Shown piece by piece: positions 5,570 through 59,461 of a stretch of DNA of 64,000 bases. Both the position numbers and the translations under genes were made by a program. This DNA is from Octopus sinensis (lineage: Eukaryota): the NCBI RefSeq assembly GCF_006345805.1, contig NC_043026.1, forward strand, positions 10,788,001-10,852,000, written 5' to 3'. Every line of letters starts with the position of its first letter. Positions within the stretch are counted from its first letter, which is position 1. The notes beneath the pieces were generated by a model. That model made no database searches, was not told where the DNA came from, and saw only the letters and a program-made list of their open reading frames with translations.

Positions 5570-6646
5570 ATGGAGAACAGTAATCACTTGGATACTTCTA
5601 AGACGAAACACAAAAAAATACATAACTGTGATATATGTGACAAATCTTTTGCTTCAAACAGTGTTTTAAGAATTCATACAAGAATCCACACGGGAGAGAA
5701 ACCGTTTCACTGTGACATCTGTGGGAAATCTTTTGTTAATAATTCTCATCTTGTAGTTCACAAACGTAGTCATACGGGAGAGAAACCCTACAATTGTGAA
5801 ATATGTGGAAAATATTTTGTCAATAATAGTGATTTGACAAAACATAAACGAATCCACACAGGGGAGAAACCCTACCATTGTGAAATCTGTGGGAAAAAAT
5901 TTGTGCATAGCAGTGTCTTGACCACACACAAGCGGATCCATACGGGGGAAAAACCTTGTCGTTGTGATGTGTGCGGCAAGTCTTTCACACGAACTTCTCG
6001 TCTTGTTATTCATAATCGTATTCACACTGGAGAAAAACCTTATCACTGTGAAATATGTGGCAAGTCTTTTTCCGATAATTCCAATCTTGTTATCCACATT
6101 CGTAGTCACACCGGGGAAAAGCCGTTCCACTGTGGGACTTGTGGGAAATCGTTTATTACTAACAGTGATTTAAACAGACACAAGCGAATTCACACGGGAG
6201 AGAAACCGTTTCATTGCGAGATCTGCGGCAAGTCTTTTCTCTCGAACAGTGACTTAATAAAGCATAAACGAATTCACACGGGAGAGAAACCGTTTCCGTG
6301 TGAAATGTGTGGTAAATATTTTGTAAACAATTCTTGTCTTGCTGTTCACAAACGGATACATACGGGAGAAAGAACTTACCATTGTGAAATATGCGGAAAA
6401 TCTTTTGTGTCTAATAGTGATTTGACTAAACATAAACGAATCCATACGGGAGAGAAACCCTACCATTGTGAGATATGTGGGAAGTGTTTCTCTGTCAATT
6501 CCAGTCTAATAGTTCACAAGCGTAGTCACACTGGAGAAAGACCATATCATTGTGAACTATGTGAGAAATCTTTTATCACTAATGCTCTCTTAAAAACACA
6601 CCAACTGACACATATTGGAGGGAAACCCTTTAACTGTGAAATGTGA
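5570..6646 (+). CDS. Z1: C2H2 zinc-finger protein, 358 aa, 12 fingers plus a truncated 13th (CEM*)
   Basis: Uninterrupted CxxC-12-HxxxH repeats with TGEKP linkers. ATG 5570 (aatATGG) aligns with paralog starts; the track start at 5534 is TTG. Confidence 0.93.
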   Translation: MENSNHLDTSKTKHKKIHNCDICDKSFASNSVLRIHTRIHTGEKPFHCDICGKSFVNNSHLVVHKRSHTGEKPYNCEICGKYFVNNSDLTKHKRIHTGEKPYHCEICGKKFVHSSVLTTHKRIHTGEKPCRCDVCGKSFTRTSRLVIHNRIHTGEKPYHCEICGKSFSDNSNLVIHIRSHTGEKPFHCGTCGKSFITNSDLNRHKRIHTGEKPFHCEICGKSFLSNSDLIKHKRIHTGEKPFPCEMCGKYFVNNSCLAVHKRIHTGERTYHCEICGKSFVSNSDLTKHKRIHTGEKPYHCEICGKCFSVNSSLIVHKRSHTGERPYHCELCEKSFITNALLKTHQLTHIGGKPFNCEM

Positions 6647-6700
6647 AAAAAAAAACCTTTTTATTGAAATACAAACTCTTTATCTGCTAACATGTACATC

Positions 6701-7605
6701 TTATTTCTTTATTGCCCACAATGGGCTAAACATGGGGACAAACAAGGAAAGACGAAGGGATTAAGTCTTATTTCTTTATTGCCCACAAGGGGCTAAACAT
6801 AGAGGGGACAAACAAGGACAGACAAAGGGATTAAGTCTTATTTCTTTATTACCCACAAAGGGCTAAACATAGAGGGGACAAACAAGGACAGACGAAGGGA
6901 TTAAGTCTTATTTCTTTATTACCCACAAGGGGCTAAACATAGAGGGGACAAACAAGGACAGACGAAGGGATTAAGTCTTATTTCTTTATTGCCCACAAGG
7001 GGCTAAACATAGAGGGGACAAACAAGGACAGACAAAGGGATTAAGTCTTATTTCTTTATTACCCACAAAGGGCTAACATAGAGGGGACAAACAAGGACAG
7101 ACGAAGGGATTAAGTCTTATTCTTTATTACCCACAAGGGGCTAAACATAGAGGGGACAAACAAGGACAGACAAAGGGATTAAGTCTTATTTCTTTATTAC
7201 CCACAAAGGGCTAAACATAGAGGGGACAAACAAGGACAGACGAAGGGATTAAGTCTTATTTCTTTATTGCCCACAAGGGGCTAAACATAGAGGGGACAAA
7301 CAAGGACAGACAAAGGGATTAAGTCTTATTTCTTTATTACCCACAAAGGGCTAAACATAGAGGGGACAAACAAGGACAGACGAAGGGATTAAGTCTTATT
7401 TCTTTATTACCCACAAAGGGCTAAACATAGAGGGGACAAACAAGGACAGACAAAGGGATTAAGTCTTATTTCTTTATTACCCACAAAGGGCTAAACATAG
7501 AGGGGACAAACAAGGACAGACGAAGGGATTAAGTCTTATTTCTTTATTACCCACAAGGGGCTAAACATAGAGGGGACAAACAAGGACAGACAAAGGGATT
7601 AAGTC
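6701..7605 (-). repeat. Tandem array of 13 ~70-bp units, each the 3' tail of SINE family 2
   Basis: Unit ttatttctttatt(g/a)cccacaa(g/a)gggctaaacatagaggggacaaacaaggacagac(a/g)aagggattaagtc runs directly into the SINE body at 7606. Confidence 0.95.
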
Positions 7606-7758
7606 GATTACATCGACCCCAGTGCGCAGCTGGTTCTTAATTTATCGACCCCGAAAGGATGAAAGGCAAAGTCGACCTCGGCGGAATTTGAACTCAGAAC
7701 GTAACGGCTACGCATTTCGCCCGCCGGCGTGCTAACGTTTCTGCCAGCTCACCGCCTT
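7536..7758 (-). mobile_element. SINE family 2 (tRNA-derived)
   Basis: Reverse complement of the copy at 11764-11994. TSD taacatgtaca at 6688-6698 and 7760-7770. Confidence 0.9.
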
Positions 7759-7986
7759 ATAACATGTACAACATCTATCAATGGTGTGAGTCACAACTTG
7801 TCGTTATTACTGAATGTCTGCTTTCCATGCTGGTATGGGTTGGACAGTGTGACAGGATCTAAGTGAGCTGCAGGCATATGTTATCTGCATTGTGCTCCAT
7901 GTAAGCATTAGGAAGGGTAGCCAGCTGTAAAAACCATGCCAAAGCAAGCAGGGGAGCTTGGCACAGCTTATTAGTTCATGTCAAAA

Positions 7987-8200
7987 GGCCGCGAGCTGGC
8001 AGAATCGTTAGCATGCCGGGCGAAATGCTTAGTGGTATTTCGTCTGCCACCACGTTCTGAGTTCAAATTCCGCCAAGGTCAACTTTGCCTTTCGTCCATT
8101 TGGGGTCGATAAATTAAGTACCAGTTGTATACTGGGGTTAATCTAATCGACTGTCTCCTCCCCTCCAAATTTTAGGCCTTGTGCCTATAATAGAAAGGAT
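7987..8200 (+). mobile_element. SINE family 2, alternative 3' end variant
   Basis: gagctggcagaatcgttagc...gagttcaaattcc...ttaggccttgtgcctataatagaaaggatt. The same variant occurs at 29170-29390 and 33146-33365. Confidence 0.85.
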
Positions 8201-9745
8201 TAGTTCGTGTCAAACCATTCAGCTGATGCTGCTATGGAAAAAGGGTCCTTCGATGATCATTGTCATCATCAAATGAGCATCTTCCATGCTGGCAAGGGTT
8301 GGATAATTTGACAATCCAGTGAGTCCAAGGATTGCATCATGCTCCAATTTCAGCTTTGATATGGTTTCTACGACTGGATGCCCTTCCTAATGCCAACCAC
8401 TTTGTAGAGTATGTAGTGGGAACTTTTGTTTCTTTTCATACTACCAGCGCTTGTGAGGTCGCCAAGTAACAGGAAAAGAACAAAGTGTGGCGGCGGGTGT
8501 GAGATAGGGGTGCTTTATGTCAGTTGTTGACAGGCTTAATTAGGATAGAGGGACAAGCACAGGTGTTGTGCTTTAGGGCAGATACATGGCTATTCCACAT
8601 TATACGAGGATAGGTGATGGTAACTGAGAAAGAGATAATAATGGTGTATGTGAGCAAACTTTCTAGGTCAAGCTCTGTGAATTCTTGTCTACAAATGTTC
8701 TTTTGCTCAAAAAAAAAATCATTTACTCCATTCACCTCTACTACCACCACCACCTCCTTTTTATCCATCTGTCACTCTCCCCTCACACTTACCCACGACC
8801 CACCCACCCTTCCTGATCCTCTGTCCCTATCCTCTCTTTTCTACTTACCTTGCTGTACTTTAAGGGTATGCTCTGACATCTCATCACCATCTTTTTCTTT
8901 TCTCACTCACCCTTGTATAATGTGTGGGATAGCCAGATCCCCCCTCTGCAGCCAGAAACCTGAGCGCTGTCCTTCAGTGTTCAGATTTCTTTGTCAAATG
9001 TAAAAAAGCAAATTTCTCACCACACAGCTGCCACCCCTGCACATAAATGGACATGAATTTCAAGAAATAGCTTCTTTTTTTCTTTTTTCTTTGTTTTGAT
9101 TACATGGAAATTTATATTATTTATTCTTGAAATTCTTAACTCCTTCCCAAAAAAATTGCACTTCATATTCAAAACTTGAAACTATAAGGAGATACCCTGG
9201 CACTCAACTATGAATCCACTGCATCCTATAGCAGAAACAGCTATAAGCTAGTGAAGTTCATAAGATAATTTTTTTCCTTTGTCATCTCTCTTTTGTGTTT
9301 TTGTTCCTTAAGACTTAAGGATCGTCATCATCGTTTTTTGGTAAAAAAAATTTTTTTTCAATAAAAGTTGAAAATGTTTACAATGTAAAGGTGTTATTTA
9401 AGGGAGATTTGGCTGTTGTTTCTAGCACACCCCACGAACACTTTCCTTATTTGTCTGTTACTCCCATAAATAACCCAAAATTTATTTTCATAAAAAGGTG
9501 CCTCCCATCATTTCAAAGACTGTGGTGAAAAACAACTTGGAAAAATCCCTGTAAAATTGGAAAAGATCCAACATACATGGGTGTCCTGATTTGAAACTCC
9601 ACCAAGAGGTAGAATGAAAGTTTACAGGACGTCACACACACACACACACACACACAAATGTACACATACTCAGGTAATTATGAGTTTAAGATAGTGTCTT
9701 CTAAAGCCATTCAATGTTGACAATATGTAAATTGAGTTATTTGTC

Positions 9746-11570: not shown

Positions 11571-11763
11571 ATATGTGTCTGAATGTGTTTCTCTGTGGAC
11601 AGCTGTAATGCAGCATGTGAACAACTGTCTTCAACTTACCAATACCCTCCCTCCTTAAAGCTATGCATTCCTCACACTTTCCTCCCTTTCCCTTCCTCAG
11701 TAGTCTAAAAGTTACACGTGTACATGTATTGCTGTGTATCTATAATGGTATCTATGTATTCAG

Positions 11764-11994
11764 GGTGGCGAGCTGGCAGAAACGTTAGCACGCCGAGCGA
11801 AATGCTTAGCAGTATTTCGTCTGCCGTTACGTTCTGAGTTCAAATTCCGCCGAGGTCGACTTTGCCTTTCATCCTTTCAGGGTCGATAAATTAAGTACCA
11901 GTTACGCACTGGGGTCGATGTAATCGACTTAATACCTATGTCTGTCCTTGTTTGTCCCCTCTATGTTTAGCCCCTTGTGGGTAATAAAGAAATA
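11764..11994 (+). mobile_element. SINE family 2, full length with 16-bp TSD
   Basis: TSD ggtatctatgtattca at 11747-11762 and 11995-12010; B-box-like gagttcaaattcc. Confidence 0.92.
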
Positions 11995-12216
11995 GGTATC
12001 TATGTATTCATATTCATGATGTATGCAGCATCCATCAGAATATAAAGTCATCTTTCACCAAGCCACACCCACCTCTTGGAAATTTCCAAATTTAGATTCT
12101 TTCAATTAATTTCTACCTTGCCCCTCTCATTCAAGTTCAGTGCAACTCAGCCCTCACCTCACACCTTCCTTATAGCACAGCCAAAATAGGTGAACAATTG
12201 CTAAGGATTTTATAAG

Positions 12217-16736: not shown

Positions 16737-17822
16737 TCAAGTCTCATCTTTAACAGATTTCCCTCCAGAGTGAATTTGTTTGTGTCTTTTTAAAAGACTC
16801 TCAGTTATAAATGATTTCTCACAGATTTCACAATGAAAGATATTTTCCCCAGTGTGAATTCTTCTGTGTTTCGTTAAATAACGATTACACACAAAATACT
16901 TATCACATATTTCACATTTGAATGGCTTTTGTCCTGTGTGTCTCTTTCTATGTCTGTTTAGATCACTTTTAGACACAAAAGCCTTCCCACAGATTTCACA
17001 CTGATAAGGTTTTTCTCCCGAGTGGATTCGTTCGTGAACCACAAGATGGGAATTCTGAGTGAAAGATTTCCCACAAATTTCACAGTGAAATGGGTTTTCA
17101 CCCGTATGAATCCGTTCATGCTCTGTTAAATTACTCTTCTTACCAAAAGACTTCTCGCATATATCACAGTGATACGGCTTTTCTCCAGTGTGACTACGTT
17201 TATGAATTATCAACTGTGAATTATCAATATATGTCTTCCCACAGACTTCACACTGATGCAGTTTATCTCCTCCATGTATCTGTTTATGTCTTTTCAAGTG
17301 GCTGTTAGTTATAAACGATTTGCCACATATATCACAGTAAAATGGTTTCTCTCCTGTATGGATTTGCACATGGACTGCAAGATGGGAATTATTACTGAAG
17401 GATTTCCCACAGATTTCACAACGGAATGGTTTTTCCCCAGTGTGGATTCGTTTGTGAACGACAAGATTAGAATTATCAGTGAAAGATTTCCCACAGATTT
17501 CACAGTGAAACGGTTTTTCTCCAGTGTGACTACGTATGTGGATAACAAGATGAGAATTTTGACTGAAAGATTTCTCACACATTCCACACTGAAACTGTTT
17601 TTCTCCAGAATGCATTTCTTTGTGTGTTAAAACTTCTTGTTCTGAAGAGAAAGTTTCCTTACAAATTTCACAACTATGTTCAGGAATATTTCTGTACAAC
17701 GGCTCTTGTTTGATAAATGTTTCACTAGGTACATCTTCCTCATCTCTGTCTGTCTCTCTAACTGTATCTATATTGTTAAAAATAGTTGTATTAGAAGTAT
17801 CCAAGTGATTAACATTCTCCAT
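16737..17822 (-). CDS. Z2: C2H2 zinc-finger protein, 361 aa from MENV, 11 fingers
   Basis: Intact finger array ending HKQIHSGGKSVKDET. An in-frame ATG also lies 9 nt upstream (17831). Confidence 0.93.
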   Translation of the reverse strand: MENVNHLDTSNTTIFNNIDTVRETDRDEEDVPSETFIKQEPLYRNIPEHSCEICKETFSSEQEVLTHKEMHSGEKQFQCGMCEKSFSQNSHLVIHIRSHTGEKPFHCEICGKSFTDNSNLVVHKRIHTGEKPFRCEICGKSFSNNSHLAVHVQIHTGEKPFYCDICGKSFITNSHLKRHKQIHGGDKLHQCEVCGKTYIDNSQLIIHKRSHTGEKPYHCDICEKSFGKKSNLTEHERIHTGENPFHCEICGKSFTQNSHLVVHERIHSGEKPYQCEICGKAFVSKSDLNRHRKRHTGQKPFKCEICDKYFVCNRYLTKHRRIHTGENIFHCEICEKSFITESLLKRHKQIHSGGKSVKDET

Positions 17823-30332: not shown

Positions 30333-31742
30333 ATGGAGAATGTTAATCACTTGGACACTCCAGACACTAATGTTTTTAATGAGAGAGACACAGACAGAGA
30401 TGAGAAAGCTGTACCTAGTGAAACATTTATCAAACAAGAGCCATTGTACAGGGATATTCCTGAATTTAGCTGTGAGATTTGTAAGGAAACTTTCTCTTCA
30501 GAACAAGAAGTCTTAACACACAAAGAAATGCATTCTGGAGAAAAACAGTTTCAGTGTGGAATGTGTGAGAAATCTTTCAGCGAAAATTCTCATCTTGTTA
30601 TCCACATACGTAGTCACACCAGAGGAAAACCATTTAACTGTCAGATCTGTGAGAAGTCGTTCGGTAGCAGGTCTCATCTTGCAGCTCATGTACGAATACA
30701 TACTGGAGCGAAATCATTTTACTGTGATATATGTGGCAAATCTTTTATAACTAACAGCCACTTGAAAAGACATAAACAGATACATGGAGGAGATAAACTG
30801 CATCAGTGTGAAGTCTGTGGGAAGACATATAATGATAATTCACAGTTGATAATTCATAAACGTAGTCACATTGTAGAAAAGCCATATCATTGTGATAAAT
30901 GTAACAAATCTTTTGATAAAAAGATTAATTTAACAGAGCATGAGAGATTTCACACTGGGGAAAAACCATTTCACTGCGAAATATGTGGGAAATCCTTCGC
31001 TAATAATTCTAGTCTTGCTGTTCACAAAAAAGTCCACTCGGGGGAAAAACCATTTCACTGTCAGATCTGTGAGAAATCCTTCAGTAATAGGTCTTATCTT
31101 GCAGTTCATGTGCAAATACATACAGGGGAGAAACCATTTTACTGTGATATATGTGGAAAATCTTTTATTACTAACAGTCATCTAAAAAGACATAAACAGA
31201 TACACGGAGAAAATAAACTGCATCAATGTGAACTGTGTGGGAGGAAATATATTGATTATTCACAACTGATCATTCACAGGCGTAGACACAATGGAGAAAA
31301 GCCCTATCATTGTGAAATATGTGAGAAATCTTTTGGTAAAAAGAGTAATTTAACAGAGCATGTCAGAATTCATACAGGTGAAAGCCCATTTCACTGTGAA
31401 ATTTGTGGGAAATCTTTTACCAAAAATTCCCATCTTGTAGTTCACGAACGAATTCACACTGGGGAGAAACCTTATCAGTGTGAAATCTGTGGGAAGGCTT
31501 TTGTTTCTAAAAGTGATCTAAACAGACATAAAAAGATTCATACAAGGCAAAAGACATATAAATGTGAAATATGTGATGAATATTTTGTCTGTAATCGTTA
31601 TTTAACAAATCACAAACGAATACACGCTGGTGAAAGCATCTTTCATTGTGAAATCTGTGAGAAATCATTTACCACTGAGAGTCTTTTAAAAAAACACAAA
31701 CAAATACACTCTGGAGAGAAATCTGTTGAAGAGGAGACTTGA
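30333..31742 (+). CDS. Z3: C2H2 zinc-finger protein, 469 aa, 15 fingers
   Basis: Intact array and close paralog of Z2, with an internal 420-bp duplication. Confidence 0.95.
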   Translation: MENVNHLDTPDTNVFNERDTDRDEKAVPSETFIKQEPLYRDIPEFSCEICKETFSSEQEVLTHKEMHSGEKQFQCGMCEKSFSENSHLVIHIRSHTRGKPFNCQICEKSFGSRSHLAAHVRIHTGAKSFYCDICGKSFITNSHLKRHKQIHGGDKLHQCEVCGKTYNDNSQLIIHKRSHIVEKPYHCDKCNKSFDKKINLTEHERFHTGEKPFHCEICGKSFANNSSLAVHKKVHSGEKPFHCQICEKSFSNRSYLAVHVQIHTGEKPFYCDICGKSFITNSHLKRHKQIHGENKLHQCELCGRKYIDYSQLIIHRRRHNGEKPYHCEICEKSFGKKSNLTEHVRIHTGESPFHCEICGKSFTKNSHLVVHERIHTGEKPYQCEICGKAFVSKSDLNRHKKIHTRQKTYKCEICDEYFVCNRYLTNHKRIHAGESIFHCEICEKSFTTESLLKKHKQIHSGEKSVEEET

Positions 31743-38774: not shown

Positions 38775-39827
38775 ATGGATAATGTTAATCACTTGGACAA
38801 GTCTAACACAACTGTTTTTAACCAAATAAATGCAGTTAGAGAGATGGACGGAGATGAGAAAATTGTAGATAAAAATGTTGCTGAATATCGTTGTGAGATT
38901 TGTAGGAAGGGTTTCTCTTCTGAACATGAAGTTTTCACGCACAAAAAAACACACACGGGAGACAGACAGTTCCGGTGCGGAATATGTGAAAAATCTTTCA
39001 ACCAGAAATGCCATCTCGTCATCCATATACGTAGTCACACTGGAGAAAAACCCTTCCGCTGTGAAATCTGTGAGAAATCATTCACAGATAATACTAATCT
39101 TGTCGTTCACAAAAGAATTCATACTGGGGAGAAACCATTCCACTGTGAAATCTGTGGGAAATCTTTCACTGATAATTCTAACCTTGTCGTTCACATACGA
39201 ATCCATACTGGAGAGAAACCGTTTCACTGTGATATTTGTGGGAAATATTTTGTTGCTAACAGTGTCTTAAGAACACACAAACGAATCCATACTGGCGAAA
39301 AACCATACCATTGCGAGATCTGTGGGAAATCTTTTATTGAGAATTCAAAGCTTACAATCCATAGACGTAGTCACACTGGAGAAAAGCCATATCATTGTGA
39401 AATCTGTTGGAAGTCTTTTGTTAGTAAAAGTAATTTGACACAGCATGAACGGATTCACAGTGGGGAAAACCCCTTTCACTGTGAAGTGTGTGGGAAATCC
39501 TTCTCTCAGAATTCCAGTCTTGTGGTTCATGAAAGGATCCACTCGGGGGAAAAACCTTACCACTGTGAGATTTGCGGCAAGTCTTTTGTCTCCAACAGTG
39601 ATTTAAACAGGCATAAAATTATTCACAGCGGGGAGAAGCCGTTCAGATGTGAAGTGTGTGAGAAATATTTTGTGAGTAACAGTTATTTGACGAAACACAG
39701 AAGAATTCACACTGGGGAAAACATTTTCCATTGTGAGATTTGTGGCAAGTCATTTATTACAAACAGCCTGTTAAAGAGACACAAGCAGATACACTCTGGA
39801 GGGATGTCTGTTAAAGATGAGACCTGA
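38775..39827 (+). CDS. Z4: C2H2 zinc-finger protein, 350 aa, 11 fingers
   Basis: Intact array; Z2/Z3 subgroup C-terminus (HKQIHSGGMSVKDET). Confidence 0.95.
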   Translation: MDNVNHLDKSNTTVFNQINAVREMDGDEKIVDKNVAEYRCEICRKGFSSEHEVFTHKKTHTGDRQFRCGICEKSFNQKCHLVIHIRSHTGEKPFRCEICEKSFTDNTNLVVHKRIHTGEKPFHCEICGKSFTDNSNLVVHIRIHTGEKPFHCDICGKYFVANSVLRTHKRIHTGEKPYHCEICGKSFIENSKLTIHRRSHTGEKPYHCEICWKSFVSKSNLTQHERIHSGENPFHCEVCGKSFSQNSSLVVHERIHSGEKPYHCEICGKSFVSNSDLNRHKIIHSGEKPFRCEVCEKYFVSNSYLTKHRRIHTGENIFHCEICGKSFITNSLLKRHKQIHSGGMSVKDET

Positions 39828-41454: not shown

Positions 41455-41923
41455 TTTAACGTACGTCACCGGTGTCATTGAAACAAGGGGAGTAATTATC
41501 AACGACACCGCCTACAGGCTGTGTTTTTAATTGCGTGAATTATATTATACGTTATAATTATCTCATGTTTAGGTGAACGTTGATGTTCGTGCTTAAGACT
41601 AGGTGATATTACAGGTTTCAAGCTCGGCCTTCTATAGCCTTCATGATTAAATATGTCATTTCATCACAGCTTTACATCGTTAATTAGTTGTTCCCTATTT
41701 TACAGGACAGGGAACATGGCTTTTAATCAACAACAAATCAATCAATGAAATTTTCATTCGGACTTTATATCAAACATTCTACTGGTGAGTAGAAAATATA
41801 CCTACATCACATCTGTTCCTCACATGTAAACGGAGGATTGTGATATCTAAGACAAGAAACTGAACCATAACAGATTAACTCACAGACACGTGTCAGTTTT
41901 TAAAGAATTCCCCAAGAATTAAT
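41455..41923 (+). promoter_or_regulatory. Z5 5' module type A (UTR exon 41706-41784, intron 41785-41896)
   Basis: acgtcaccggtgtca core, tattttacag acceptor, ctg|gtgagt donor and tgtcag acceptor. Splicing is inferred. Confidence 0.6.
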
Positions 41924-43066
41924 ATGGAGAAGAGCAATCACTTGGATACTTCAAACGCAAATGTTTTTAACAATATAGATATAGTTGCACAGACAGATAT
42001 AGATGAGAAACCTGTCCTTGGCGAAGTATTTACTCAAGAAAGATCGTTACAGGAAAATCTTACTGAATATAGATGTGATGTTTGTCGGAAGACCTTCTCT
42101 TCAGAACGTGAAGTCTTCACGCACAAAGAAATACACAGCAAGGAGAATCATTATCAATGTGAAATATGTGGGGAGTATTTTGTCTCTGATAATGTTTTAA
42201 GAATACACCAACGAAAACACGCCCAAGTCAAACCGTTGGGCTGTGAAATATGTAGTAACAATTCTAGTCTTATTATCCACGTTTGCAGTCATACTAACGA
42301 AAAACCGTTTCACTGTGAAATGCTCAAGAAATCTTACTCTGGTAATCCTAGTCTTATAGTCCATAAACGAATGCACCCTGGCAAAAAGGCCTATCACTGT
42401 GAAATCTGTGGAGAATGTTTCTGTCAGAAATCTAAGATGACTTTACATAAATATAGTCACACTGGAAAGAAGCCGTTCTATTGTGATATATGCGGGAAAT
42501 GTTTTGTGAGGAAGTGTACTTTGTCGACACACAAAAAAATTCACTCTGGGGAGAAACCGTGGCACTGTGAAATCTGTGAGAAGTCGTTTGCGAAATCTAG
42601 CCATTTAAGCAGGCATAAATTAACACACACGGGAGAAAGACCTTTCCCTTGCAATGTATGTGGGAAATCTTTTATTACTAATGATAACTTAAAAACGCAC
42701 AAGATGATACATTCTGGGGAAAAACTATTTCGCTGTGAAATATGTGAGAGATCTTTTGTCTCTAATACTCATTTAAGCAGACACAACAGAGTCCATAGTG
42801 GCGAGAAGCCCTTTCATTGTGAGATTTGTGGGAAAGGCTTTGCCTCTAACAGTGATTTAAACAGGCATAAACGAATTCATACTGGAGAGAAACCATTTCA
42901 TTGTGAAATGTGTGGGAAGTCATTCTCTGATAATTCTAATCTTGTGGGTCACATCCGCAGCCATACTGGGGAAAGACCGTATCATTGTGAAACTTGTGGG
43001 AAATGTTTTGTGACCAGTAGTCACTTAAAAAGACACTTACAAACACACACTGGAAAGAAGACTTGA
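41924..43066 (+). CDS. Z5: C2H2 zinc-finger protein, 380 aa, 12 repeats (fingers 3 and 4 degenerate)
   Basis: Open frame. Finger 3 lacks 4 residues and finger 4 reads CEML. Confidence 0.93.
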   Translation: MEKSNHLDTSNANVFNNIDIVAQTDIDEKPVLGEVFTQERSLQENLTEYRCDVCRKTFSSEREVFTHKEIHSKENHYQCEICGEYFVSDNVLRIHQRKHAQVKPLGCEICSNNSSLIIHVCSHTNEKPFHCEMLKKSYSGNPSLIVHKRMHPGKKAYHCEICGECFCQKSKMTLHKYSHTGKKPFYCDICGKCFVRKCTLSTHKKIHSGEKPWHCEICEKSFAKSSHLSRHKLTHTGERPFPCNVCGKSFITNDNLKTHKMIHSGEKLFRCEICERSFVSNTHLSRHNRVHSGEKPFHCEICGKGFASNSDLNRHKRIHTGEKPFHCEMCGKSFSDNSNLVGHIRSHTGERPYHCETCGKCFVTSSHLKRHLQTHTGKKT

Positions 43067-48443: not shown

Positions 48444-49865
48444 TCATGTTCCACTGTTTAAAGTCTTTCTGTTTGCATGTATTTGTTTGTGTCTTTTTAA
48501 GTTTCTGTTCGTCCCAAAAGATTTCCCACAGATATCACAAGGATGAGGTTTTTCTCCAGTATGACTTCGTACATGACTGACAAGATTAGAATTATCAGAG
48601 AATGTCTTCTCACATACTTCACATCTAAAGGGTTTTTCCCCAGTATGAATTCTTCTATGTTTCTTTAAATCACTGTTAGAAACAAAACATTTCCCACAGA
48701 TTTCACAACGAAAAGCTTTCTCCCCATTATGTATCTTCTTATGTCTGTTTAAAGTACTATTGGAGACAAAAGACTTCTCACAGATTTCACAGTTAAATAG
48801 TTTTTCTCCAGAATGCATCATCATGTGTTTCTTCAAGTGACCATTAGTTATAAACGATTTTCCGCACTTTCCACAATAACACAGATTTTCTCCCGTGTGG
48901 ATTCGTCTGTGAGACGTAAAATCACTTTTAGCAACAAAATTCTTCCCACATATTTCGCACTGCCACGGTTTCTCCCCTGTATGCACTGATTTGTGAGTAT
49001 CTAAGCAGCTATATTTCGCAAAAGCTTTTCCACATATTTCACAGTGCCAAGGTTTCTCTCCAGAATGTGTCATTTTGTGAACAATTAGATTCGATTTCTG
49101 AACGAAATTTTTCCCACATATTTCACAGAGGTAAGGTTTTTCTCCCGTATGTATCCGTTCGTGTGTTGATAAATTACTCTTCTTCATAAAACATTTGCCA
49201 CAAATGTCACAATGAAACGGTTTCTCTCCCGTGTGACTACGTTTATGTACAGTCAACTTACATTTCTGATTGAAACAATCTCCGCAAATTTCACAGTCAT
49301 AGGACTTATCTCCAGTGTGTAGTTGTTTATGGACTACAAGACAAGAATTACCAGAGTAAGATTTTCCGCACATTTCACACTGAAACGGTTTTTCTCCAGT
49401 GTGACTACGTTTGTGGAAAACAAGATTAGAATTATTTATAAAAGACTTTCCGCATATTTCACAGTGGAAGGGTTTATCTCCAGTATGTATTCGTTTGTGT
49501 GTGATTAAATTACTCTTGTTGACAAAACATTTCCCGCATATGTCACAACGAAACGGCTTCTCTGCAGTGTGACCACGTTTATGCACGGTCAGCTTCCATT
49601 TCTGATGGAAACATTTTCCACATATTTCACAGTGGTAAGTTTTATCCTCAGAGTGTATTTCTTCATGCTTCAAAACTTCATGTTCTGAAGAGAATGTCTT
49701 CCTACAAACATCACGTCTATATTCAGCAATATTTCCCTGTAACGATCTTTCATTAGTAAATGTTTCACTAAAAACAGGTTTCTCATCTCCGTCTGTTTCA
49801 CTAAATGTTTCTATATCGCTAAAAACATTAGTGTTTGAAGTATCAAAATGATCACTGTTCTCCAT
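48444..49865 (-). CDS. Z6: C2H2 zinc-finger protein, 473 aa, 15 repeats (first has Cys to Arg)
   Basis: Intact frame; leader MENSDHFDTSNTNVF is related to Z5. Confidence 0.94.
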   Translation of the reverse strand: MENSDHFDTSNTNVFSDIETFSETDGDEKPVFSETFTNERSLQGNIAEYRRDVCRKTFSSEHEVLKHEEIHSEDKTYHCEICGKCFHQKWKLTVHKRGHTAEKPFRCDICGKCFVNKSNLITHKRIHTGDKPFHCEICGKSFINNSNLVFHKRSHTGEKPFQCEMCGKSYSGNSCLVVHKQLHTGDKSYDCEICGDCFNQKCKLTVHKRSHTGEKPFHCDICGKCFMKKSNLSTHERIHTGEKPYLCEICGKNFVQKSNLIVHKMTHSGEKPWHCEICGKAFAKYSCLDTHKSVHTGEKPWQCEICGKNFVAKSDFTSHRRIHTGENLCYCGKCGKSFITNGHLKKHMMMHSGEKLFNCEICEKSFVSNSTLNRHKKIHNGEKAFRCEICGKCFVSNSDLKKHRRIHTGEKPFRCEVCEKTFSDNSNLVSHVRSHTGEKPHPCDICGKSFGTNRNLKRHKQIHANRKTLNSGT

Positions 49866-54768: not shown

Positions 54769-55081
54769 TAAATCATCATCATCATCGTTTAATGTCCGTT
54801 TTCCATGCTAGCATGGGTTGGACAGTTCAACTGGGGTCTGGGAAGCCAGGAGGCTGCACCAGGCCCAGTCTGATCTGGCAGTGTTTCTACAGCTGGATGC
54901 CCTTCCTAACGCCAACCACTCCGTGAGTGTAGTGGGTGCTTTTTTACGTGCCACCTACACAGGTGCCAGACGAGGCTGGCAAACGGCCACAATCGGATGG
55001 TGCTTTTTATGTGCCACCAGCATGGAGGCCAGTCGGGGCGGTGCTGGCAACAGCCACGTTCGGATGGTTCTCTTATGTGCC
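54769..55081 (-). mobile_element. RTE 3' UTR copy abutting the Z7 stop
   Basis: (cat)n start; homology extends to within about 8 bp of the stop codon. Confidence 0.85.
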
Positions 55082-55088
55082 TTTAAAA

Positions 55089-56699
55089 TTAGTCCAAATG
55101 GTTCATTCCGGGATGTGTTTTCTTGTGCGTTTTCAAGACACTGTTAGTGCGAAAAGATTTTCCACATATATCGCAATTGAAAAGTCTTTCTCCACTGTGA
55201 ATACGTTTGTGAACAACAAGACTGAAATCACGGGTAAAACATTTCCCACAGGTTTCACAGTGGAAAGGTCTTTCTCCCGTGTGTGTTTGTTTGTGCTTTA
55301 TCAAATTGCTATTATCAATAAAACTTTTCCCACAGGTTTCGCAGTGAAAAGAGTTTTCTCCTGTGTGACAACGTATATGTTTTGTCAAATAGCTATTATC
55401 AACATAAGATTTCCCACAAATTTCACAGTGGAAAGGTTTCTCTCCAGTGTGAATACGTTTGTGGATAACAAGACTTGTACTGACAGTGAAGGACTTCCCA
55501 CATATATTACAAGAATATGGTTTTTCTCCAGCATGTCTACGCATGTGGACTGCAAGAGAAGAATTGTCAGAGAACGATTTACCACACACTTCACAATGAT
55601 AAGGTTTTTCTCCAGAATGAGTCCTCTTGTGCCTGTTTAAATTATATTGATGTAGAAAAGATTTACTACATATATCACAATGATATGGTTTTTCCCCAGT
55701 ATGTGTTTTGTGATGCAAATTTAAATGACTTTTAGAAATAAAACATTTCCCACAGATTTCACAACGAAAGGGTTTTTCCCCCGTGTGAGTTTTGTTGTGC
55801 CTGTCTAAACAATTTTTAGTAAAAAACGATTTCCCGCAAATCTCACAGTGGAAGGGTTGTTTTCCACTGTGACTACGTTTGTGGGATACAAGATGAAAGT
55901 TTTTAATGAAATGCTTCCCACATATCTCACAGTGGAAGGGTTCCTCCTCCGTGTGTATTCGTTTATGATTTACAAGACATGAATTATTAATAAAGAATTT
56001 TCCACAAATTTCACAAGAAAAGAGTTTTTCTTCAGCATGTGTCCGTTTGTGTCTTGTCAAATAACTATTACAAAGAAAAGATTTCCCACAAATTTCACAG
56101 TGGAAAGGCTTCTCTCCAGTGTGGATACGTTTGTGAATAACAAGACTCCCACCAACAGAGAATGATTTCCCACAAATATTACAAGAATATGGTTTTTCTC
56201 CAGTGTGACTACGCTTGTGGACTACAAGATGAGAACTGTCAGAGAAGGATTTCCCACACACTTCACAATGATATGGTTTTTCTCCAGAATGAGTTCTCTT
56301 GTGTCTGTTTAAATCGTATTTAAAAAGAAAACATTTCTCACAAATTTCACAGTGGAAAGGTTTTTCTCCAGTATGTCCTTTGTTATGTCTGTTCAAATCA
56401 TGTTTCGAAAGAAACGATTTCTCGCATATCTCACAGTGATAGGATCGTCCTCCAGTATGACTACGTATGTGGGATACAAGAAGAGGCTTCTTCATGAAAC
56501 ATTTACCACATATTTCACAGTGGAACGGCCTCTTATTCTGGTGTATTTCTTTATGCTTCAAAACTTCATGTTCTGATGATAATGTTTTCTTACAAACATC
56601 ACATCTATATTCAATATTTCCCTGTAACGATCTTCCTTTAGAAAGTGTTTCGTTATATACAGCTTCCTCATTTCTGCCCGTCTGTGTAACGTTCTCCAT
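55089..56699 (-). CDS. Z7: C2H2 zinc-finger protein, 536 aa from MENV, 18 fingers
   Basis: Intact array. An in-frame ATG also lies at 56708; the track start at 56711 is TTG. Confidence 0.95.
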   Translation of the reverse strand: MENVTQTGRNEEAVYNETLSKGRSLQGNIEYRCDVCKKTLSSEHEVLKHKEIHQNKRPFHCEICGKCFMKKPLLVSHIRSHTGGRSYHCEICEKSFLSKHDLNRHNKGHTGEKPFHCEICEKCFLFKYDLNRHKRTHSGEKPYHCEVCGKSFSDSSHLVVHKRSHTGEKPYSCNICGKSFSVGGSLVIHKRIHTGEKPFHCEICGKSFLCNSYLTRHKRTHAEEKLFSCEICGKFFINNSCLVNHKRIHTEEEPFHCEICGKHFIKNFHLVSHKRSHSGKQPFHCEICGKSFFTKNCLDRHNKTHTGEKPFRCEICGKCFISKSHLNLHHKTHTGEKPYHCDICSKSFLHQYNLNRHKRTHSGEKPYHCEVCGKSFSDNSSLAVHMRRHAGEKPYSCNICGKSFTVSTSLVIHKRIHTGEKPFHCEICGKSYVDNSYLTKHIRCHTGENSFHCETCGKSFIDNSNLIKHKQTHTGERPFHCETCGKCFTRDFSLVVHKRIHSGERLFNCDICGKSFRTNSVLKTHKKTHPGMNHLD

Positions 56700-57260
56700 A
56701 TTAATCATCAAGGAATTCTCAAAAGCTGAAAATTGTCTTTAGATATAATCTACCGTCGCTCACTTCGTCCTTTTCGATATTGCAGATCTCTGCTTACATG
56801 TGTGGAATATTTCCAAGGTAGATACATTTTTCTACTCACTGCTACACTGTTTCTTACTGACTAATTCACAATTTAATTATTCTGTAGTCCATAAAATATA
56901 GAGCATCCATATACGATTGGTAACAAACGTTCTTATGAGATTGGCATTATTCTACAAGTTATAGTGGAGAGATCTGTAAACAAGAAAAGGTACGACAGTG
57001 TAAAATCGATGTAGGAGAAAGAAAATGTGTGCACTTTCAGTCTTAATAAATCGGGAAAGTTTATCACGCATAGAAGTGAACAATGTTGTTCCAAGGCGAC
57101 AATCGAAGGAACGAGTTCTTCCGACTTAAAGAGGAACAGAAAAATTAAGAATGATCAGAGTAAAGATAATTACAATATATGATATAAATAGATTAATTAG
57201 CTGAAATAATTACAAACAGATTCAATTTTTCCTTGTTTCAATGACACCGGTGATAGTTGT
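56700..57260 (-). promoter_or_regulatory. Z7 5' module (type A core, type B UTR exon, intron 56726-56839)
   Basis: Inverted homolog of 57885-58432. Confidence 0.6.
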
Positions 57261-57502
57261 AAAGTGTCCCTAACATAATTTATTACGTTCAAATACTGCT
57301 GAAATCATTAAATTATTTTGTTCATTTTTTTGTCTTTTTCTATTTTGAGAATTGTTTTTACTTTCATTTTTTTTCTTTTATAAGATTTTGCTGGCAAATT
57401 CTTAAATTAACATAAACATTTTTATTTATTTGAAAGAAAATTACTGGAGAATTTTTTTTATTCACAATGGCTCGATACAAGGAGCATATTAACATAAAGT
57501 GA

Positions 57503-57830
57503 AGGTGCATGGCTCAGTGGTTAAATCATGAGGTAGTGAGTTCGATTCCCAGACTGGTCTGTGTGTTGTGTTCTTCAGCAAGACCATTTATTTCATTTGT
57601 TCTATTTCACTCAGCTGTAGAAATGAGATGCGACGTTACTGGTGCCAAGCTGTATCGACCATTGCCTTTCCCGTGGACAACATAAGTGGCGTAGCGAGGG
57701 GAGACTGGTATACATGCGCGGCGGGTGCAGGTCTTCCATAAACAACCCTGCCAGGACTTGCACCTCTGAGGGCAACTTTGGATCTTTCTATGTGCAATCT
57801 CATGGTCATTCATGATCGATGTGGGTCTTT
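57503..57830 (+). mobile_element. SINE family 4 between the Z7 and Z8 promoters
   Basis: tggctcagtgg and gagttcgattcc boxes. A second copy lies at 63512-64000. Confidence 0.75.
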
Positions 57831-57884
57831 ATTAATATAAAATGAAGCTGTTTCTGAATATATCAGATTATGTTAGGGACACTT

Positions 57885-58432
57885 TACACCTGTCACCGGT
57901 GTCATTCAAACGAAGCAGAAAAGCTTTGAACGACACCGCCTTCTGAATATGTTTGTAGCTAATTAATCTAATTATATCATGTATTGTAATTATCTCGTAT
58001 TAATTAACCAGTAACTAATTATTATCTTTTACTCTGATCCTTCTTAATTTTTCTGTTCCTCTTCAAGTCAGAAAGACTCTTTCCTTCGATTGTCACCTTA
58101 GAACAAAATAGTTCACTTTACATCGATCTTACACTACTATACCTTCTCTTATTTACAGATGCCCTGACTGATCCCGCCTTTGTAACTTGTAGAACGATGC
58201 CTATCTCATAAGAACGTTTGTTACCACGCGTATATTTATGGACTACAGAACATCATTAAATTGTAAATTAGTCATGAAGGAACATTCTAGCAGTGAGTAG
58301 AAAAATGTATCTACCTTGGAAATATTCCCCACTTGTAAGCAGAGATCTGCAATATCGAAAAGGACGAAGTGAGCGACGGTAGATTATATCTAAAGACATT
58401 TTTCAGCTTTTGAGAATTCCTTGAGAATTAAT
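57885..58432 (+). promoter_or_regulatory. Z8 5' module (core 57892-57904, intron 58293-58406)
   Basis: gtcaccggtgtca, aacgacaccgcc, ca|gtgagt and ttttcag. Confidence 0.6.
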
Positions 58433-59461
58433 ATGGAGAACGTTGCACGGACGGGCAGAAATGAGGGAGCTGTACATAACGAAACATTTTCTAAAGAAAG
58501 ATCGTTGCAGGGAAATATTACTGAATATAGATGTGATGTTTGTAAGAAAACATTCTCTTCAGAACCTGAAGTTTTGAAGCATAAAGAAATACATCAGAAG
58601 AAGCGGCCCTTTCGCTGTGAAATATGTGGTAAATGTTTCATTAAGAACTCTCATCTTGTAACCCACAAACGCAGTCACACTGGAGAAAAACCATATCGAT
58701 GTGACATCTGTGGGAAATCTTTCATTTCTCAAAGTAGTTTAAATATGCATAATCGGACTCACACTGGGGAGAAACCTTTCCACTGTGAATTATGTGGGAA
58801 ACGTTTTATTGATGTTGGTCATTTAATAAGACACAAACGAACCCACTCTGGAGAAAAGCCATATCATTGTGAGATCTGTGGGAAATGTTTTATTGAAAAT
58901 TCTAAGCTTGTGGGACACATACGTAGTCACACTGGAGAGAGGCCATTCCACTGTGAAATTTGTGGGAAATCCTTCTCTGATAATTCTAATCTTGTTGTCC
59001 ACAAGCGTAGACACACTGGGGAAAAACTGTATTCTTGTAATATATGTGGGAAATCATTCTCTGTTAGTGGGAGCCTCGTTATCCACAAGCGTATCCACAC
59101 GGGTGAGAAGCCTTTCCACTGTGAAATTTGCGAGACATCTTTTGGTGATAAAAGTTCTTTAAAGAGACACGTACGTATCCACTCTGGGGAAAAACCTTTC
59201 CATTGTGAAATATGTGGGAAATCTTTCCTTGATAATGGTAATTTAAGAAAACACATACGTAGACACATAGGAGCAGAACCTTTCCACTGTGAGATATGTG
59301 GGAAATCTCTCGTTAGTAATGCTAGTTTAATTATACATAAACGAACACACACTGGGGAAAGACCTTTCCACTGTGATATATGTGGTAAGTCTTTTCCCAG
59401 CAACAATAATTTAAACAGGCACAACAGAAGCCACTCTGGAGAAGAAACCATAAAATTGTGA
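58433..59461 (+). CDS. Z8: C2H2 zinc-finger protein, 342 aa, 11 fingers
   Basis: Intact array ending in a frameshifted linker (SGEETIKL*). The track start at 58421 is TTG. Confidence 0.93.
   Translation: MENVARTGRNEGAVHNETFSKERSLQGNITEYRCDVCKKTFSSEPEVLKHKEIHQKKRPFRCEICGKCFIKNSHLVTHKRSHTGEKPYRCDICGKSFISQSSLNMHNRTHTGEKPFHCELCGKRFIDVGHLIRHKRTHSGEKPYHCEICGKCFIENSKLVGHIRSHTGERPFHCEICGKSFSDNSNLVVHKRRHTGEKLYSCNICGKSFSVSGSLVIHKRIHTGEKPFHCEICETSFGDKSSLKRHVRIHSGEKPFHCEICGKSFLDNGNLRKHIRRHIGAEPFHCEICGKSLVSNASLIIHKRTHTGERPFHCDICGKSFPSNNNLNRHNRSHSGEETIKL

What the first reader, a model, noticed from the sequence alone, without database searches (positions are those of the whole stretch)
5570..59461. KRAB-less ZNF cluster with a shared acidic leader and an invariant non-canonical first finger: candidate lineage-specific effector module
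Seen: Z2-Z8 begin with an acidic leader (MENV/S...ETDxDE..V..ETF..ExSL..NIxEY) and a first finger CxxCxKxFSSE(Q/H/R/P)EVxxHxxxH. It has an acidic helix, V in place of L and usually a non-TGEKP linker, and it stays recognisable while fingers 2 onward vary in number (11-18 total) and helix sequence. Established: octopus genomes have large clustered C2H2 expansions, and other lineages pair variable arrays with a fixed effector (KRAB in tetrapods, ZAD in insects). Inference: leader plus finger 1 is a protein-interaction module playing that role. I know of no named domain for it.
Basis: partly seen in the sequence, partly recalled or inferred. Interest (0 to 1): 0.78.

Follow-up and report, generated by a model that had tools for sequence, protein, structure and literature searches.

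The report
Octopus zinc-finger genes' shared N-terminus
Eight neighbouring octopus zinc-finger genes belong to one undescribed subfamily marked by an unusual, well-conserved first finger and a fast-evolving, floppy, mostly acidic tail; the finger may be a protein-contact module, but the tail is not clearly under selection and one gene has done without both for a long time.

Summary
Seven of the eight single-coding-exon C2H2 genes (Z2-Z8, Octopus sinensis chromosome CM016888.1) start with a homologous 32-50 aa leader and an atypical first finger (F1). F1 has E at helix +1/+3/+9, V at +4, K/R where other fingers have G, and no TGEKP linker. "Invariant" overstates it. Z6 has lost the first Cys, an O. 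bimaculoides relative has lost the second, and Z7/Z8 leaders are not acidic.

The leader matches no Pfam family. I found the module only in Octopus (three O. sinensis chromosomes, O. bimaculoides, one further assembly), but no genome-wide census was possible.

The two halves behave differently:
- **F1** is under purifying selection (omega about 0.2, with silent sites diverged). That is no stronger than the framework of ordinary fingers, yet its helix surface is fixed.
- **The leader** is predicted to be disordered, has indels, and has omega 0.5-0.9, which I could not separate from neutrality.

Part of the 5' similarity comes from gene conversion and includes a conserved non-coding exon and intron. 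Z1 lacks the leader and F1 but shows 7 synonymous and 0 non-synonymous differences from its ortholog.

Verdict: this is an undescribed subfamily signature. An interaction role for F1 is plausible but unproven. The KRAB-like effector claim is only partly supported.

The parts
5570..6646 (+). Z1: 12-finger gene that keeps only the first ~10 leader codons (MENSNHLDTS). Most of the leader and F1 are deleted in frame.
   Evidence: Its protein is identical in a second Octopus assembly, with 7 synonymous and 0 non-synonymous differences.
17673..17822 (-). Z2 leader (50 aa, net charge -8)
17589..17672 (-). Z2 F1 (CEICKETFSSEQEVLTHKEMH) plus linker SGEKQFQ
16737..17588 (-). Z2 fingers 2-11 and tail
   Evidence: Comparison with the ortholog shows 7 synonymous and 0 non-synonymous differences in the fingers.
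30333..30470 (+). Z3 leader (46 aa)
30471..30554 (+). Z3 F1 plus linker
30555..31742 (+). Z3 fingers 2-15, including an internal 5-finger (420 bp) duplication relative to Z2
38775..38891 (+). Z4 leader (39 aa; 11-aa deletion of the ETF..SLQ block)
38892..38975 (+). Z4 F1 (CEICRKGFSSEHEVFTHKKTH) plus linker TGDRQFR
41924..42073 (+). Z5 leader (50 aa)
   Evidence: 44/50 residues are identical in the O. bimaculoides ortholog P0015.
42074..42157 (+). Z5 F1 (CDVCRKTFSSEREVFTHKEIH) plus linker SKENHYQ
   Evidence: 21/21 residues are identical in P0015.
49716..49865 (-). Z6 leader (50 aa, net charge -9)
49632..49715 (-). Z6 F1 with the first zinc ligand lost (RDVCRKTFSSEHEVLKHEEIH) plus linker
56604..56699 (-). 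Z7 leader (32 aa; lacks the NHLDTS..NID block; net charge -1)
56520..56603 (-). Z7 F1 (CDVCKKTLSSEHEVLKHKEIH) plus linker QNKRPFH
58433..58531 (+). Z8 leader (33 aa; net charge 0)
58532..58615 (+). Z8 F1 (CDVCKKTFSSEPEVLKHKEIH) plus linker QKKRPFR
56613..56880 (-). Z7 arm of an inverted repeat with Z8 (pairs with 58252-58519). It covers the non-coding 5' block and the start of the CDS and is 93% identical over 268 nt, whereas the 3' 600 nt of the two genes are 73% identical.
   Evidence: I14, I4
58252..58519 (+). Z8 arm of the same inverted repeat
   Evidence: I14
41774..41923 (+). Z5 conserved non-coding 5' block: end of a 5' exon, GTGAGT donor at -139, an intron of ~101-112 nt, a YAG acceptor at -38/-27, and the 5'UTR. 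Equivalent blocks lie about 150 nt upstream of the ATGs of Z2 (17823-17972), Z3 (30183-30332), Z4 (38625-38774), Z6 (49866-50015), Z7 (56700-56849) and Z8 (58283-58432).
   Evidence: The fused gene model P0004 uses the same junction.

Best explanation
Shown: the window holds a cluster of eight paralogous genes from one Octopus-lineage C2H2 subfamily. Each gene has a conserved non-coding 5' exon, an intron of about 100-114 nt, and one coding exon. The protein really does start at MEN.., with no hidden upstream coding exon. The subfamily signature has two parts that evolve differently.

1. F1 is an atypical first finger. Its helix face (S-1, E+1, E+3, V+4, E+9) is fixed in every member seen. Its net charge is low or negative and it lacks the TGEKP linker. 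It is kept by purifying selection.
2. The leader is a 32-50 aa N-terminal tail. It is predicted to be disordered, is usually acidic, is riddled with indels, and evolves at close to the neutral rate.

Similarity at the 5' end is also boosted by gene conversion between neighbours, which covers non-coding DNA as well.

Inferred mechanism (about 40% likely): F1 does not read DNA. Possibly together with the 15-20 residues before it (ETF..SLQ.NI.EY, weakly predicted to add a beta-strand to the finger hairpin), it presents a conserved surface to a fixed partner. That partner could be a cofactor or another copy of the protein. Fingers 2 onward supply the variable DNA specificity. The distal acidic tail would be at most a low-specificity acidic or hydrophobic appendage.

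The module is a hallmark of the subfamily, not a requirement: Z1 has lost it and is still under purifying selection.
For: Homology and restriction of the block to gene starts.

F1 is a distinct finger class: (E+1 7/7 against 2/96; V+4 7/7 against L 94/96; E+9 6/7 against R/Q/K; no TGEKP). Its net charge is -3 to +2, against a mean of +1.9 for other fingers.

Purifying selection on F1 with diverged silent sites:
- Omega 0.17 [0.05-0.58] in close pairs.
- Omega 0.23 [0.13-0.37] in deep pairs, with dS 0.86.
- Binomial p=0.002 and p=0.0006.
- 21/21 identity between O. sinensis Z5 and O. bimaculoides P0015.
- No change in F1 between the two Z2 orthologs.

Distribution: the same F1 and leader occur on two further O. 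sinensis chromosomes, in O. bimaculoides and in a Logan assembly.

No known domain.

True N-terminus: the ATG frame is closed by a stop within 39-126 nt upstream, whether spliced or unspliced.

Structure: AlphaFold2 gives a confident helix and hairpin for F1 (block pLDDT 80-86). With the 14-sequence alignment it adds weak strands at residues 36-40 and 47-51.

Precedent: single N-terminal C2H2 fingers with an adjacent strand dimerise in Drosophila (PMC12774644).
Against: Leader:
- Omega 0.54 [0.30-1.09] in close pairs and 0.6-0.9 in deep pairs. Neutrality is not rejected in deep pairs (p=0.34).
- It takes 2 of the 3 non-synonymous changes in the Z2 ortholog pair and 6 of the 11 substitutions in the Z5 pair.
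- pLDDT is below 50.
- The proximal block is deleted in Z4 and the distal block in Z7/Z8.

F1:
- It is no more constrained than ordinary finger framework (p=0.79).
- A zinc ligand is lost in Z6 and in the 473-aa O. bimaculoides gene.
- An F1-type finger also occurs inside an array (L004 gene at 20822).
- E at +3 is compatible with DNA reading in classical fingers (my own knowledge of Zif268), so DNA binding is not excluded.

Other:
- Z1 lacks the module but is constrained.
- The extra strand is a low-confidence prediction (pLDDT 56-62), and Foldseek finds nothing significant.
- There are no expression, binding or interaction data.
Confidence: 0.45

Rival explanations
1. The block is a historical signature with no special function. 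F1 is simply the terminal repeat of the array. Array ends are shielded from the unequal crossing-over that reshuffles internal fingers, so both ends stay recognisable. The leader drifts almost neutrally, and local gene conversion keeps the 5' ends of neighbours alike.
For: - The last four fingers are nearly as conserved position-for-position as F1 (0.63-0.64 against 0.67).
- F1 omega equals finger-framework omega.
- Leader omega is near 1.
- The Z7/Z8 5' ends are a 93% inverted repeat that includes non-coding DNA, while their arrays are 73% identical and have dS about 0.5.
- Z1 survives without the module.
- Zinc ligands are lost in two members.
Against: - The edge effect explains persistence but not why non-framework helix positions (-2, -1, +1, +3, +4, +9) are fixed in all 15 sequences. 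These come from three chromosomes and at least two species, and F1 silent sites are saturated in deep pairs (dS 0.7-0.9).
- Ordinary fingers vary at exactly those positions (contact-position omega 0.51).
Confidence: 0.25
2. F1 is a DNA-reading anchor finger. Its fixed contact residues (S-1, E+3, T/K+6) recognise one invariant triplet shared by all targets of the subfamily, for example a conserved part of a repeat family. The other fingers diversify.
For: - Contact positions -1 and +3 are invariant, and +6 is restricted to T/K.
- Octopus poly-ZNF motifs are predicted to be enriched in transposable-element consensus sequences (PMC10547256).
- The finger has the full C2H2 spacing and folds as a beta-beta-alpha unit in the models.
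Against: - Net charge is about 2-5 units lower than in other fingers.
- Glu replaces the usual Arg/Lys/Gln at +9, and Lys/Arg replaces Gly after the second Cys.
- There is no TGEKP linker to F2. By established knowledge, this linker is typical of consecutive DNA-bound fingers.
- Zinc ligands are lost in two otherwise intact genes.
Confidence: 0.12
3. What is conserved at the 5' end is mainly nucleotide sequence: a promoter-proximal exon and intron, the 5'UTR and the translation start, which act as regulatory elements shared by the subfamily. The leader peptide rides along with it.
For: - The non-coding block from -36 to -150 is as conserved as, or more conserved than, silent sites: K=0.04 for Z7-Z8, 0.10 for Z5-Z6 and 0.25 for Z2-Z5, against array dS of 0.5-1.2. 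The 3' flanks cannot be aligned.
- The block is recognisable on other chromosomes and in O. bimaculoides.
- Leader dS (0.27-0.5) is lower than F1 or array dS in deep pairs.
- The 400 nt upstream of Z2 differ at 3 positions between the two closely related assemblies, against about 1.2-2.8% mismatch in other non-coding DNA.
Against: - This does not explain F1, whose silent sites have diverged while its amino acids have not.
- The donor site is missing in Z3 and Z4.
- Gene conversion explains the closest pairs equally well.
Confidence: 0.13

Closest known systems
FiNZ-ZNF genes of cyprinid fish (Wells et al. 2023, PMC10547256)
   Same: - A lineage-restricted poly-C2H2 family defined by a short N-terminal sequence.
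- That sequence has no similarity to known domains and is enriched in acidic residues.
- The genes are clustered and rapidly duplicating, with variable arrays.
- The biochemical role of the N-terminal sequence is itself still unknown.
   Different: - FiNZ is 28 aa, highly conserved and encoded by its own exon upstream of the array exon.
- Here the leader lies in the same exon as the fingers, is poorly conserved (omega 0.5-0.9), has indels, and is paired with a special finger.
- FiNZ genes number about 700 in zebrafish and have knock-down evidence for transposable-element repression. The size and function of this family are unknown.
KRAB-ZNF genes of tetrapods
   Same: The same logic as the one proposed: a fixed N-terminal module plus a variable finger array, in clustered tandem duplicates. 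Acidic composition is also shared.
   Different: - No match to Pfam KRAB (PF01352).
- KRAB is a folded domain of about 75 aa on separate exons that recruits TRIM28.
- Here there is no separate exon, no predicted fold in the leader and no known partner.
ZAD-ZNF genes of insects
   Same: A lineage-specific N-terminal module on clustered poly-ZNF genes. ZAD is itself a zinc-binding protein-protein (dimerisation) module, which is the role I infer for F1.
   Different: - ZAD is a C4 zinc-coordinating domain of about 75-90 aa (PF07776), and no match was found.
- The octopus leader has no conserved cysteines.
- The zinc-binding unit here is an ordinary-length C2H2 finger.
Single N-terminal C2H2 fingers with an adjacent beta-strand that dimerise (CGx-Phi type, Drosophila; PMC12774644)
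   Same: An N-terminal C2H2 finger, set apart from the DNA-binding array, that acts in protein-protein contact. A flanking strand extends the finger's sheet, and AlphaFold2 weakly predicts such a strand at residues 36-40 of Z5.
   Different: - The leader contains no CGx-Phi motif.
- That class is reported as Diptera-specific.
- The octopus strand prediction has low confidence, and dimerisation is untested.
Octopus and coleoid C2H2 expansions in general (Holzinger et al. 2025, PMC12513265; Albertin et al. 2015, as cited in PMC10547256)
   Same: These genes are ordinary members of the known octopus-specific expansions in being clustered and having many TGEKP-linked fingers.
   Different: Neither paper I could read mentions an N-terminal signature (one search finds no occurrence of 'N-terminal' or 'motif'). 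A neighbouring ZNF of another subfamily in L003 lacks the leader, so the signature marks a subfamily and not all octopus ZNFs.

Membership tests
C2H2 zinc finger (Pfam PF00096 and relatives), applied to F1 | C-x2-C-x12-H-x3-H ligand spacing with a conserved aromatic residue, folding as beta-beta-alpha | tested here: met
   6 of 7 window copies have all four ligands; Z6 has Arg at the first Cys. Pfam C2H2-type models cover the F1 residues, for example residues 38-60 of Z4. AlphaFold2 gives a hairpin plus helix with pLDDT 80-86.
Canonical DNA-reading tandem finger | TGEKP-type linker to the next finger, Leu at helix +4, and net positive charge | tested here: not met
   0/7 have a TGEKP linker, V is at +4 in 7/7, E is at +9 in 6/7, and net charge is -3 to +2 against a mean of +1.9.
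KRAB | Match to the KRAB profile (PF01352) | tested here: not met
   No hit in the full proteins at E<=1 or in the leaders alone at E<=10.
KRAB / FiNZ gene architecture | Effector encoded on its own exon upstream of the finger exon | tested here: not met
   The leader, F1 and the array form one ORF. The ATG frame is closed within 39-126 nt upstream, with or without the inferred intron.
ZAD | Match to PF07776 and four zinc-coordinating cysteines in the N-terminal domain | tested here: not met
   No Pfam hit. There are no conserved cysteines in the leader alignment.
SCAN / BTB-POZ | Match to PF02023 or PF00651 | tested here: not met
FiNZ | Sequence similarity to the 28-aa cyprinid consensus | not tested
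The composition is similar (acidic), as described in PMC10547256.
CGx-Phi-type dimerising C2H2 | CGx-Phi motif in a strand adjacent to a single N-terminal finger | tested here: not met
   The motif is absent from all 15 leader sequences.
CGx-Phi-type dimerising C2H2 | Self-association of the isolated domain | not testable with these tools
   This needs SEC-MALS, yeast two-hybrid or a multimer prediction.
Lineage-specific ZNF-associated effector module (functional class) | Protein-level purifying selection on the module | tested here: inconclusive
   F1 passes (omega about 0.2, p<=0.002). The leader does not clearly pass (omega 0.5-0.9; p=0.04 and p=0.34).
Lineage-specific ZNF-associated effector module (functional class) | Transferable regulatory activity or cofactor binding | not testable with these tools

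The most novel reading that the evidence does not exclude
The proximal leader (ETF..SLQ.NI.EY) and F1 together form an octopod-specific extended zinc finger that does not bind DNA. Instead it recruits a cofactor or dimerises. That would be an independent, cephalopod invention of a ZNF-associated effector domain, alongside KRAB, ZAD and FiNZ, and it would give the first handle on how the large octopus ZNF expansions act.
Probability: 0.3. Interest if true: 0.7.

Novelty: new member of a known kind. Interest (0 to 1): 0.4.

Why it matters
Octopus genomes carry very large C2H2 expansions whose mode of action is unknown, and no effector domain has been assigned to them. A subfamily-wide, selected, probably non-DNA-reading first finger is a concrete and small construct (about 40-80 aa). 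It can be tested by tethering, interaction and dimerisation assays, and it can serve as a marker for annotating the subfamily, which current gene models fuse or truncate.

The analysis also narrows the target. The constrained element is F1, not the acidic tail. The analysis also warns that similarity among neighbouring paralogs is inflated by gene conversion.

Tried and rejected
1. **The search for homologous proteins (three searches).** The profile searches returned only one true relative (P0001). The full-length Z6 search was swamped by vertebrate poly-ZNFs. No cephalopod census was possible.
2. **The search of protein representatives.** It found the family, but the 150-row list is dominated by many-finger proteins that score on the finger part alone. 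Absence of the leader outside Octopus is therefore not shown.
3. **A hidden upstream coding exon (KRAB-like).** Rejected. The frame is closed within 39-126 nt in all members. The N-terminal extensions in P0017 and P0004 are chimeric or fused gene models.
4. **A folded leader domain.** Two AlphaFold2 runs give pLDDT <50 for residues 1-33/36. Foldseek against the PDB has no hit below E=0.85.
5. **Rfam scan of the window.** No hits, so the conserved 5' block is not a known RNA family.
6. **O. vulgaris-type orthologs of Z3, Z4 and Z7 by exact-protein look-up.** None on record. Only Z1 and Z2 could be compared.
7. **The run SRR11869391 behind P0001.** Its species could not be identified.
8. **A conserved SUMO-interaction-like motif or other short linear motif in the leader.** Considered by eye. 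None is conserved across members.
9. **The F2 row of the position-matched identity table.** It is misregistered for Z4 and Z8 because of a regex artefact, so I did not use it.

Full report
**What is in the window.** The window has eight long ORFs, all of them poly-C2H2 proteins. They lie at 5534-6646(+), 16737-17831(-), 30333-31742(+), 38775-39827(+), 41924-43066(+), 48444-49865(-), 55089-56711(-) and 58421-59461(+). I call them Z1-Z8. They carry 10-18 canonical fingers, mostly joined by TGEKP linkers. Pfam finds only C2H2-type families in them. The exact Z5, Z8, Z4 and Z3 proteins are encoded on NCBI assembly GCA_006345805.1, chromosome CM016888.1, at about 10.8 Mb. Named proteins from the same assembly are labelled Octopus sinensis. 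No further ZNF lies within about 5 kb on either side of the window.

**Checking the observation.** Z2-Z8 share a homologous N-terminal block. The leader is 32-50 residues long (consensus MENVNHLDTSNT.VFN....V..TD.DEK.V..ETF.K.RSLQ.NI.EYR). It is followed by a first finger C..C.KTFSSE.EV..HKEIH and a non-TGEKP linker. tblastn finds the block once per gene and nowhere else.

Against the 96 other fingers of the window, F1 is a distinct class:
- E at +1 in 7/7 (others 2/96).
- E at +3 in 7/7.
- V at +4 in 7/7 (others L in 94/96).
- E at +9 in 6/7 (others R/Q/K).
- K/R after the second Cys (others G in 71/96).

F1's net charge is -3 to +2, against a mean of +1.9 for the other fingers. So the description holds, with corrections. 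F1 is not invariant: Z6 has lost the first Cys, Z7 has Leu for Phe, and only 12 of 78 columns are invariant. The leader is not acidic in Z7/Z8 (net charge -1 and 0) and has deletions of 17-18 aa (Z7/Z8), 11 aa (Z4) and 4 aa (Z3). Z1 retains only MENSNHLDTS before its array. The last four fingers are nearly as recognisable position-for-position as F1 (0.63-0.64 against 0.67; background 0.53), so array turnover is mainly internal. One example is the 420-bp, five-finger duplication in Z3.

**Gene structure.** About 150 nt upstream of the ATG is conserved in most members, including those from other chromosomes and species. This stretch holds a GT[AG]AGT donor at -125 to -140 in Z2, Z5, Z6, Z7, Z8, the O. 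bimaculoides gene and L005. A YAG acceptor lies at -26 to -42, giving an intron of roughly 85-115 nt. A fused database gene model (P0004) reads exactly across this junction (..LYIKHST|AFQNCSRNTMENV). Spliced or not, the ATG frame is closed by a stop within 39-126 nt. MEN.. is therefore the true N-terminus, and there is no hidden KRAB-like coding exon. Unlike KRAB or FiNZ, the module is not a separate exon.

**Known domains and distribution.** The leaders alone hit nothing in Pfam at E<=10. An HMM of leader+F1 run against 1.84 billion representative proteins recovers leader-covering matches only from Octopus. These are O. bimaculoides XP_014789413.1, XP_052833736.1 and A0A0L8GTW0, and O. sinensis XP_029652431.1 and XP_029645730.2 on two other chromosomes. 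There is also an unnamed UniParc entry and one Logan assembly. The output list is saturated by many-finger proteins, so absence elsewhere is not demonstrated. The three word-indexed protein searches were uninformative.

The loci fetched for these relatives show the following:
- A 473-aa single-exon gene in O. bimaculoides whose F1 has lost the second Cys.
- Two genes 10.8 kb apart on CM016886.1. One is truncated after F1. The other is 471 aa and has the F1-F2 pair duplicated, so an F1-type finger also sits at position 3.
- A truncated gene on CM016873.1.

A neighbouring ZNF of another type lacks the leader. The two papers I could read on octopus and metazoan ZNF expansions do not describe this signature (PMC12513265; PMC10547256).

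**Selection among paralogs.** I used Nei-Gojobori estimates pooled over three independent paralog pairs (Z2-Z3, Z5-Z6, Z7-Z8).

| Region | omega (95% bootstrap interval) |
|---|---|
| Leader | 0.54 [0.30-1.09] |
| F1 | 0.17 [0.05-0.58] |
| Orthologous fingers 2 onward | 0.22 [0.16-0.30] |
| Their framework positions | 0.18 |
| Their contact positions (-1, 2, 3, 6) | 0.51 |

In deep pairs F1 keeps omega 0.23 [0.13-0.37] although its silent sites have diverged (dS 0.86). The distal and proximal halves of the leader give 0.6-0.9, with intervals that include 1. Binomial tests against neutrality give p=0.002 and p=0.0006 for F1, and p=0.04 and p=0.34 for the leader. F1 does not differ from ordinary finger framework (p=0.79). 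The leader is more relaxed than framework (p=0.012).

**Selection among orthologs.** Z5 against its O. bimaculoides ortholog P0015 is 44/50 identical in the leader, 21/21 in F1 and about 118/123 in the rest. A second assembly, GCA_951406725.2, encodes an identical Z1 and a Z2 ortholog. From my own knowledge this assembly is Octopus vulgaris. Non-coding mismatch to the window is about 1.2-2.8%. The differences are as follows:
- Z1 has 7 synonymous and 0 non-synonymous differences (P=1.3e-5).
- The Z2 fingers have 7 synonymous and 0 non-synonymous differences.
- The Z2 leader has 1 synonymous and 2 non-synonymous differences (both Ile to Val).

So F1 is constrained and the leader is the fastest-evolving part of the protein. 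A gene without either part is still maintained by selection.

**Concerted evolution.** The non-coding block from -36 to -150 is less diverged than silent sites in the arrays. K is 0.04 for Z7-Z8, 0.10 for Z5-Z6 and 0.25 for Z2-Z5, against array dS of 0.5-1.2. The 3' flanks cannot be aligned. The divergently oriented Z7 and Z8 share a 268-nt inverted repeat, 93% identical, that spans the non-coding DNA and the first codons. Their 3' 600 nt are 73% identical (I14 and I4). Z5/Z6 show the same pattern more weakly (I10). Selection on amino acids cannot lower non-coding or silent divergence. I therefore infer gene conversion, and possibly regulatory constraint, at the 5' ends. Some of the impression that the N-terminus stays put while the arrays vary comes from this process. 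It does not account for F1 in deep comparisons.

**Structure.** AlphaFold2 on Z2 (7-sequence alignment) and on Z5 (14-sequence alignment) gives pLDDT <50 for residues 1-36 and 1-33, and 80-86 for the F1 hairpin and helix. The deeper alignment adds low-confidence strands at 36-40 and 47-51, which would extend the finger's sheet. Foldseek against the PDB gives no significant match (best E=0.85). The alignments are shallow, so a fold-upon-binding element cannot be excluded.

**Interpretation.** The best-supported reading is a subfamily signature inherited by duplication. Its selected element is an atypical first finger with a fixed, acidic helix face and no canonical linker. The leader is a disordered, weakly constrained appendage.

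I think it most likely (about 40%) that F1 is a non-DNA-reading contact finger, perhaps extended by the proximal leader, that binds a cofactor or another copy of the protein. The closest precedent for this mechanism is the class of single N-terminal C2H2 domains with an adjacent strand that dimerise in Drosophila (PMC12774644). The closest precedent for the evolutionary pattern is the FiNZ family (PMC10547256). F1 is not a member of either class, nor of KRAB, ZAD, SCAN or BTB.

The rivals are:
- A functionless edge-of-array relic plus gene conversion.
- A DNA-anchor finger.
- Nucleotide-level (regulatory) conservation of the 5' end.

Each explains part of the data, and the last can coexist with the main reading.

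**Verdict.** The family is an undescribed member of a familiar kind: a lineage-specific poly-ZNF subfamily with its own N-terminal signature. It is of moderate interest, and the interest would rise if F1 proves to recruit a partner.

Noticed in passing
window 6594-7731: A 70-bp tandem array (about 13 copies, 96% matches by TRF) starts at the stop codon of Z1 and runs for about 1.1 kb.
   Followed up: no
window 25782-26450: A CT-rich tandem repeat with periods of 74-86 and 160 bp.
   Followed up: no
window 23304-23699 (-) and 52733-53257 (+): Transposable-element remnants lie between the ZNF genes. One ORF has reverse-transcriptase and PHD hits. Another has a mariner-type Transposase_1 / DDE_3 hit.
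   Followed up: partly
window 7985-8222, 11762-11999, 50835-51072, 61826-62063; 10788-10988, 12936-13136, 14845-15045, 59498-59698; 21801-22190, 28727-29139, 60342-60729: Several families of interspersed repeats of 200-240 nt at 80-92% identity (SINE-like) are scattered through the intergenic DNA.
   Followed up: no
window 5475-5505 (+), 16271-16301 (-); L004 just upstream of 10001: The same repeat end (CCTGAGCACTGTATACAATAATTTCATTATT) lies 65 nt upstream of the Z1 ATG, where it replaces the conserved 5' block. It also lies about 25 nt upstream of a truncated family member on another chromosome. This suggests independent insertions of one element into the 5' intron of two genes.
   Followed up: partly
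L004:20822-22237 (O. sinensis CM016886.1): A 471-aa family member has its F1-F2 pair duplicated in tandem, so a second F1-type finger (CEICGKKFPSELEVSAHKQIH) sits at array position 3.
   Followed up: partly
L006:12-8276; P0004; P0017 (L003:10001-21333); L005:10001-63618: Public gene models for this family are often wrong. An 850-aa model fuses Z6 and Z7. P0004 fuses two genes through the 5' non-coding exon. P0017 joins an unrelated upstream ORF and skips part of the array. One model spans 53 kb.
   Followed up: partly
window 42157-42400 (Z5 residues ~79-157): Z5 carries a truncated finger and a finger lacking its second Cys. Both defects are present and about 96% conserved in the O. bimaculoides ortholog P0015, so these degenerate units are old and retained.
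   Followed up: partly
window 41800-41835 and 49950-50000 (5' exons of Z5 and Z6): The conserved 5' non-coding exon contains an upstream ATG (ATGGCTTTTAAT..., MAFNQQQINQ* in Z5), which is a possible uORF. It is preceded by a good acceptor (TTTTACAG|G), which hints at a further upstream exon.
   Followed up: no
window 54936-55640 (+), 5666-6130 (-), 17256-17630 (+), 58927-59451 (-): Long antisense or off-frame ORFs inside the finger arrays (up to 234 aa) are by-products of the 84-bp repeat structure and are not genes.
   Followed up: no
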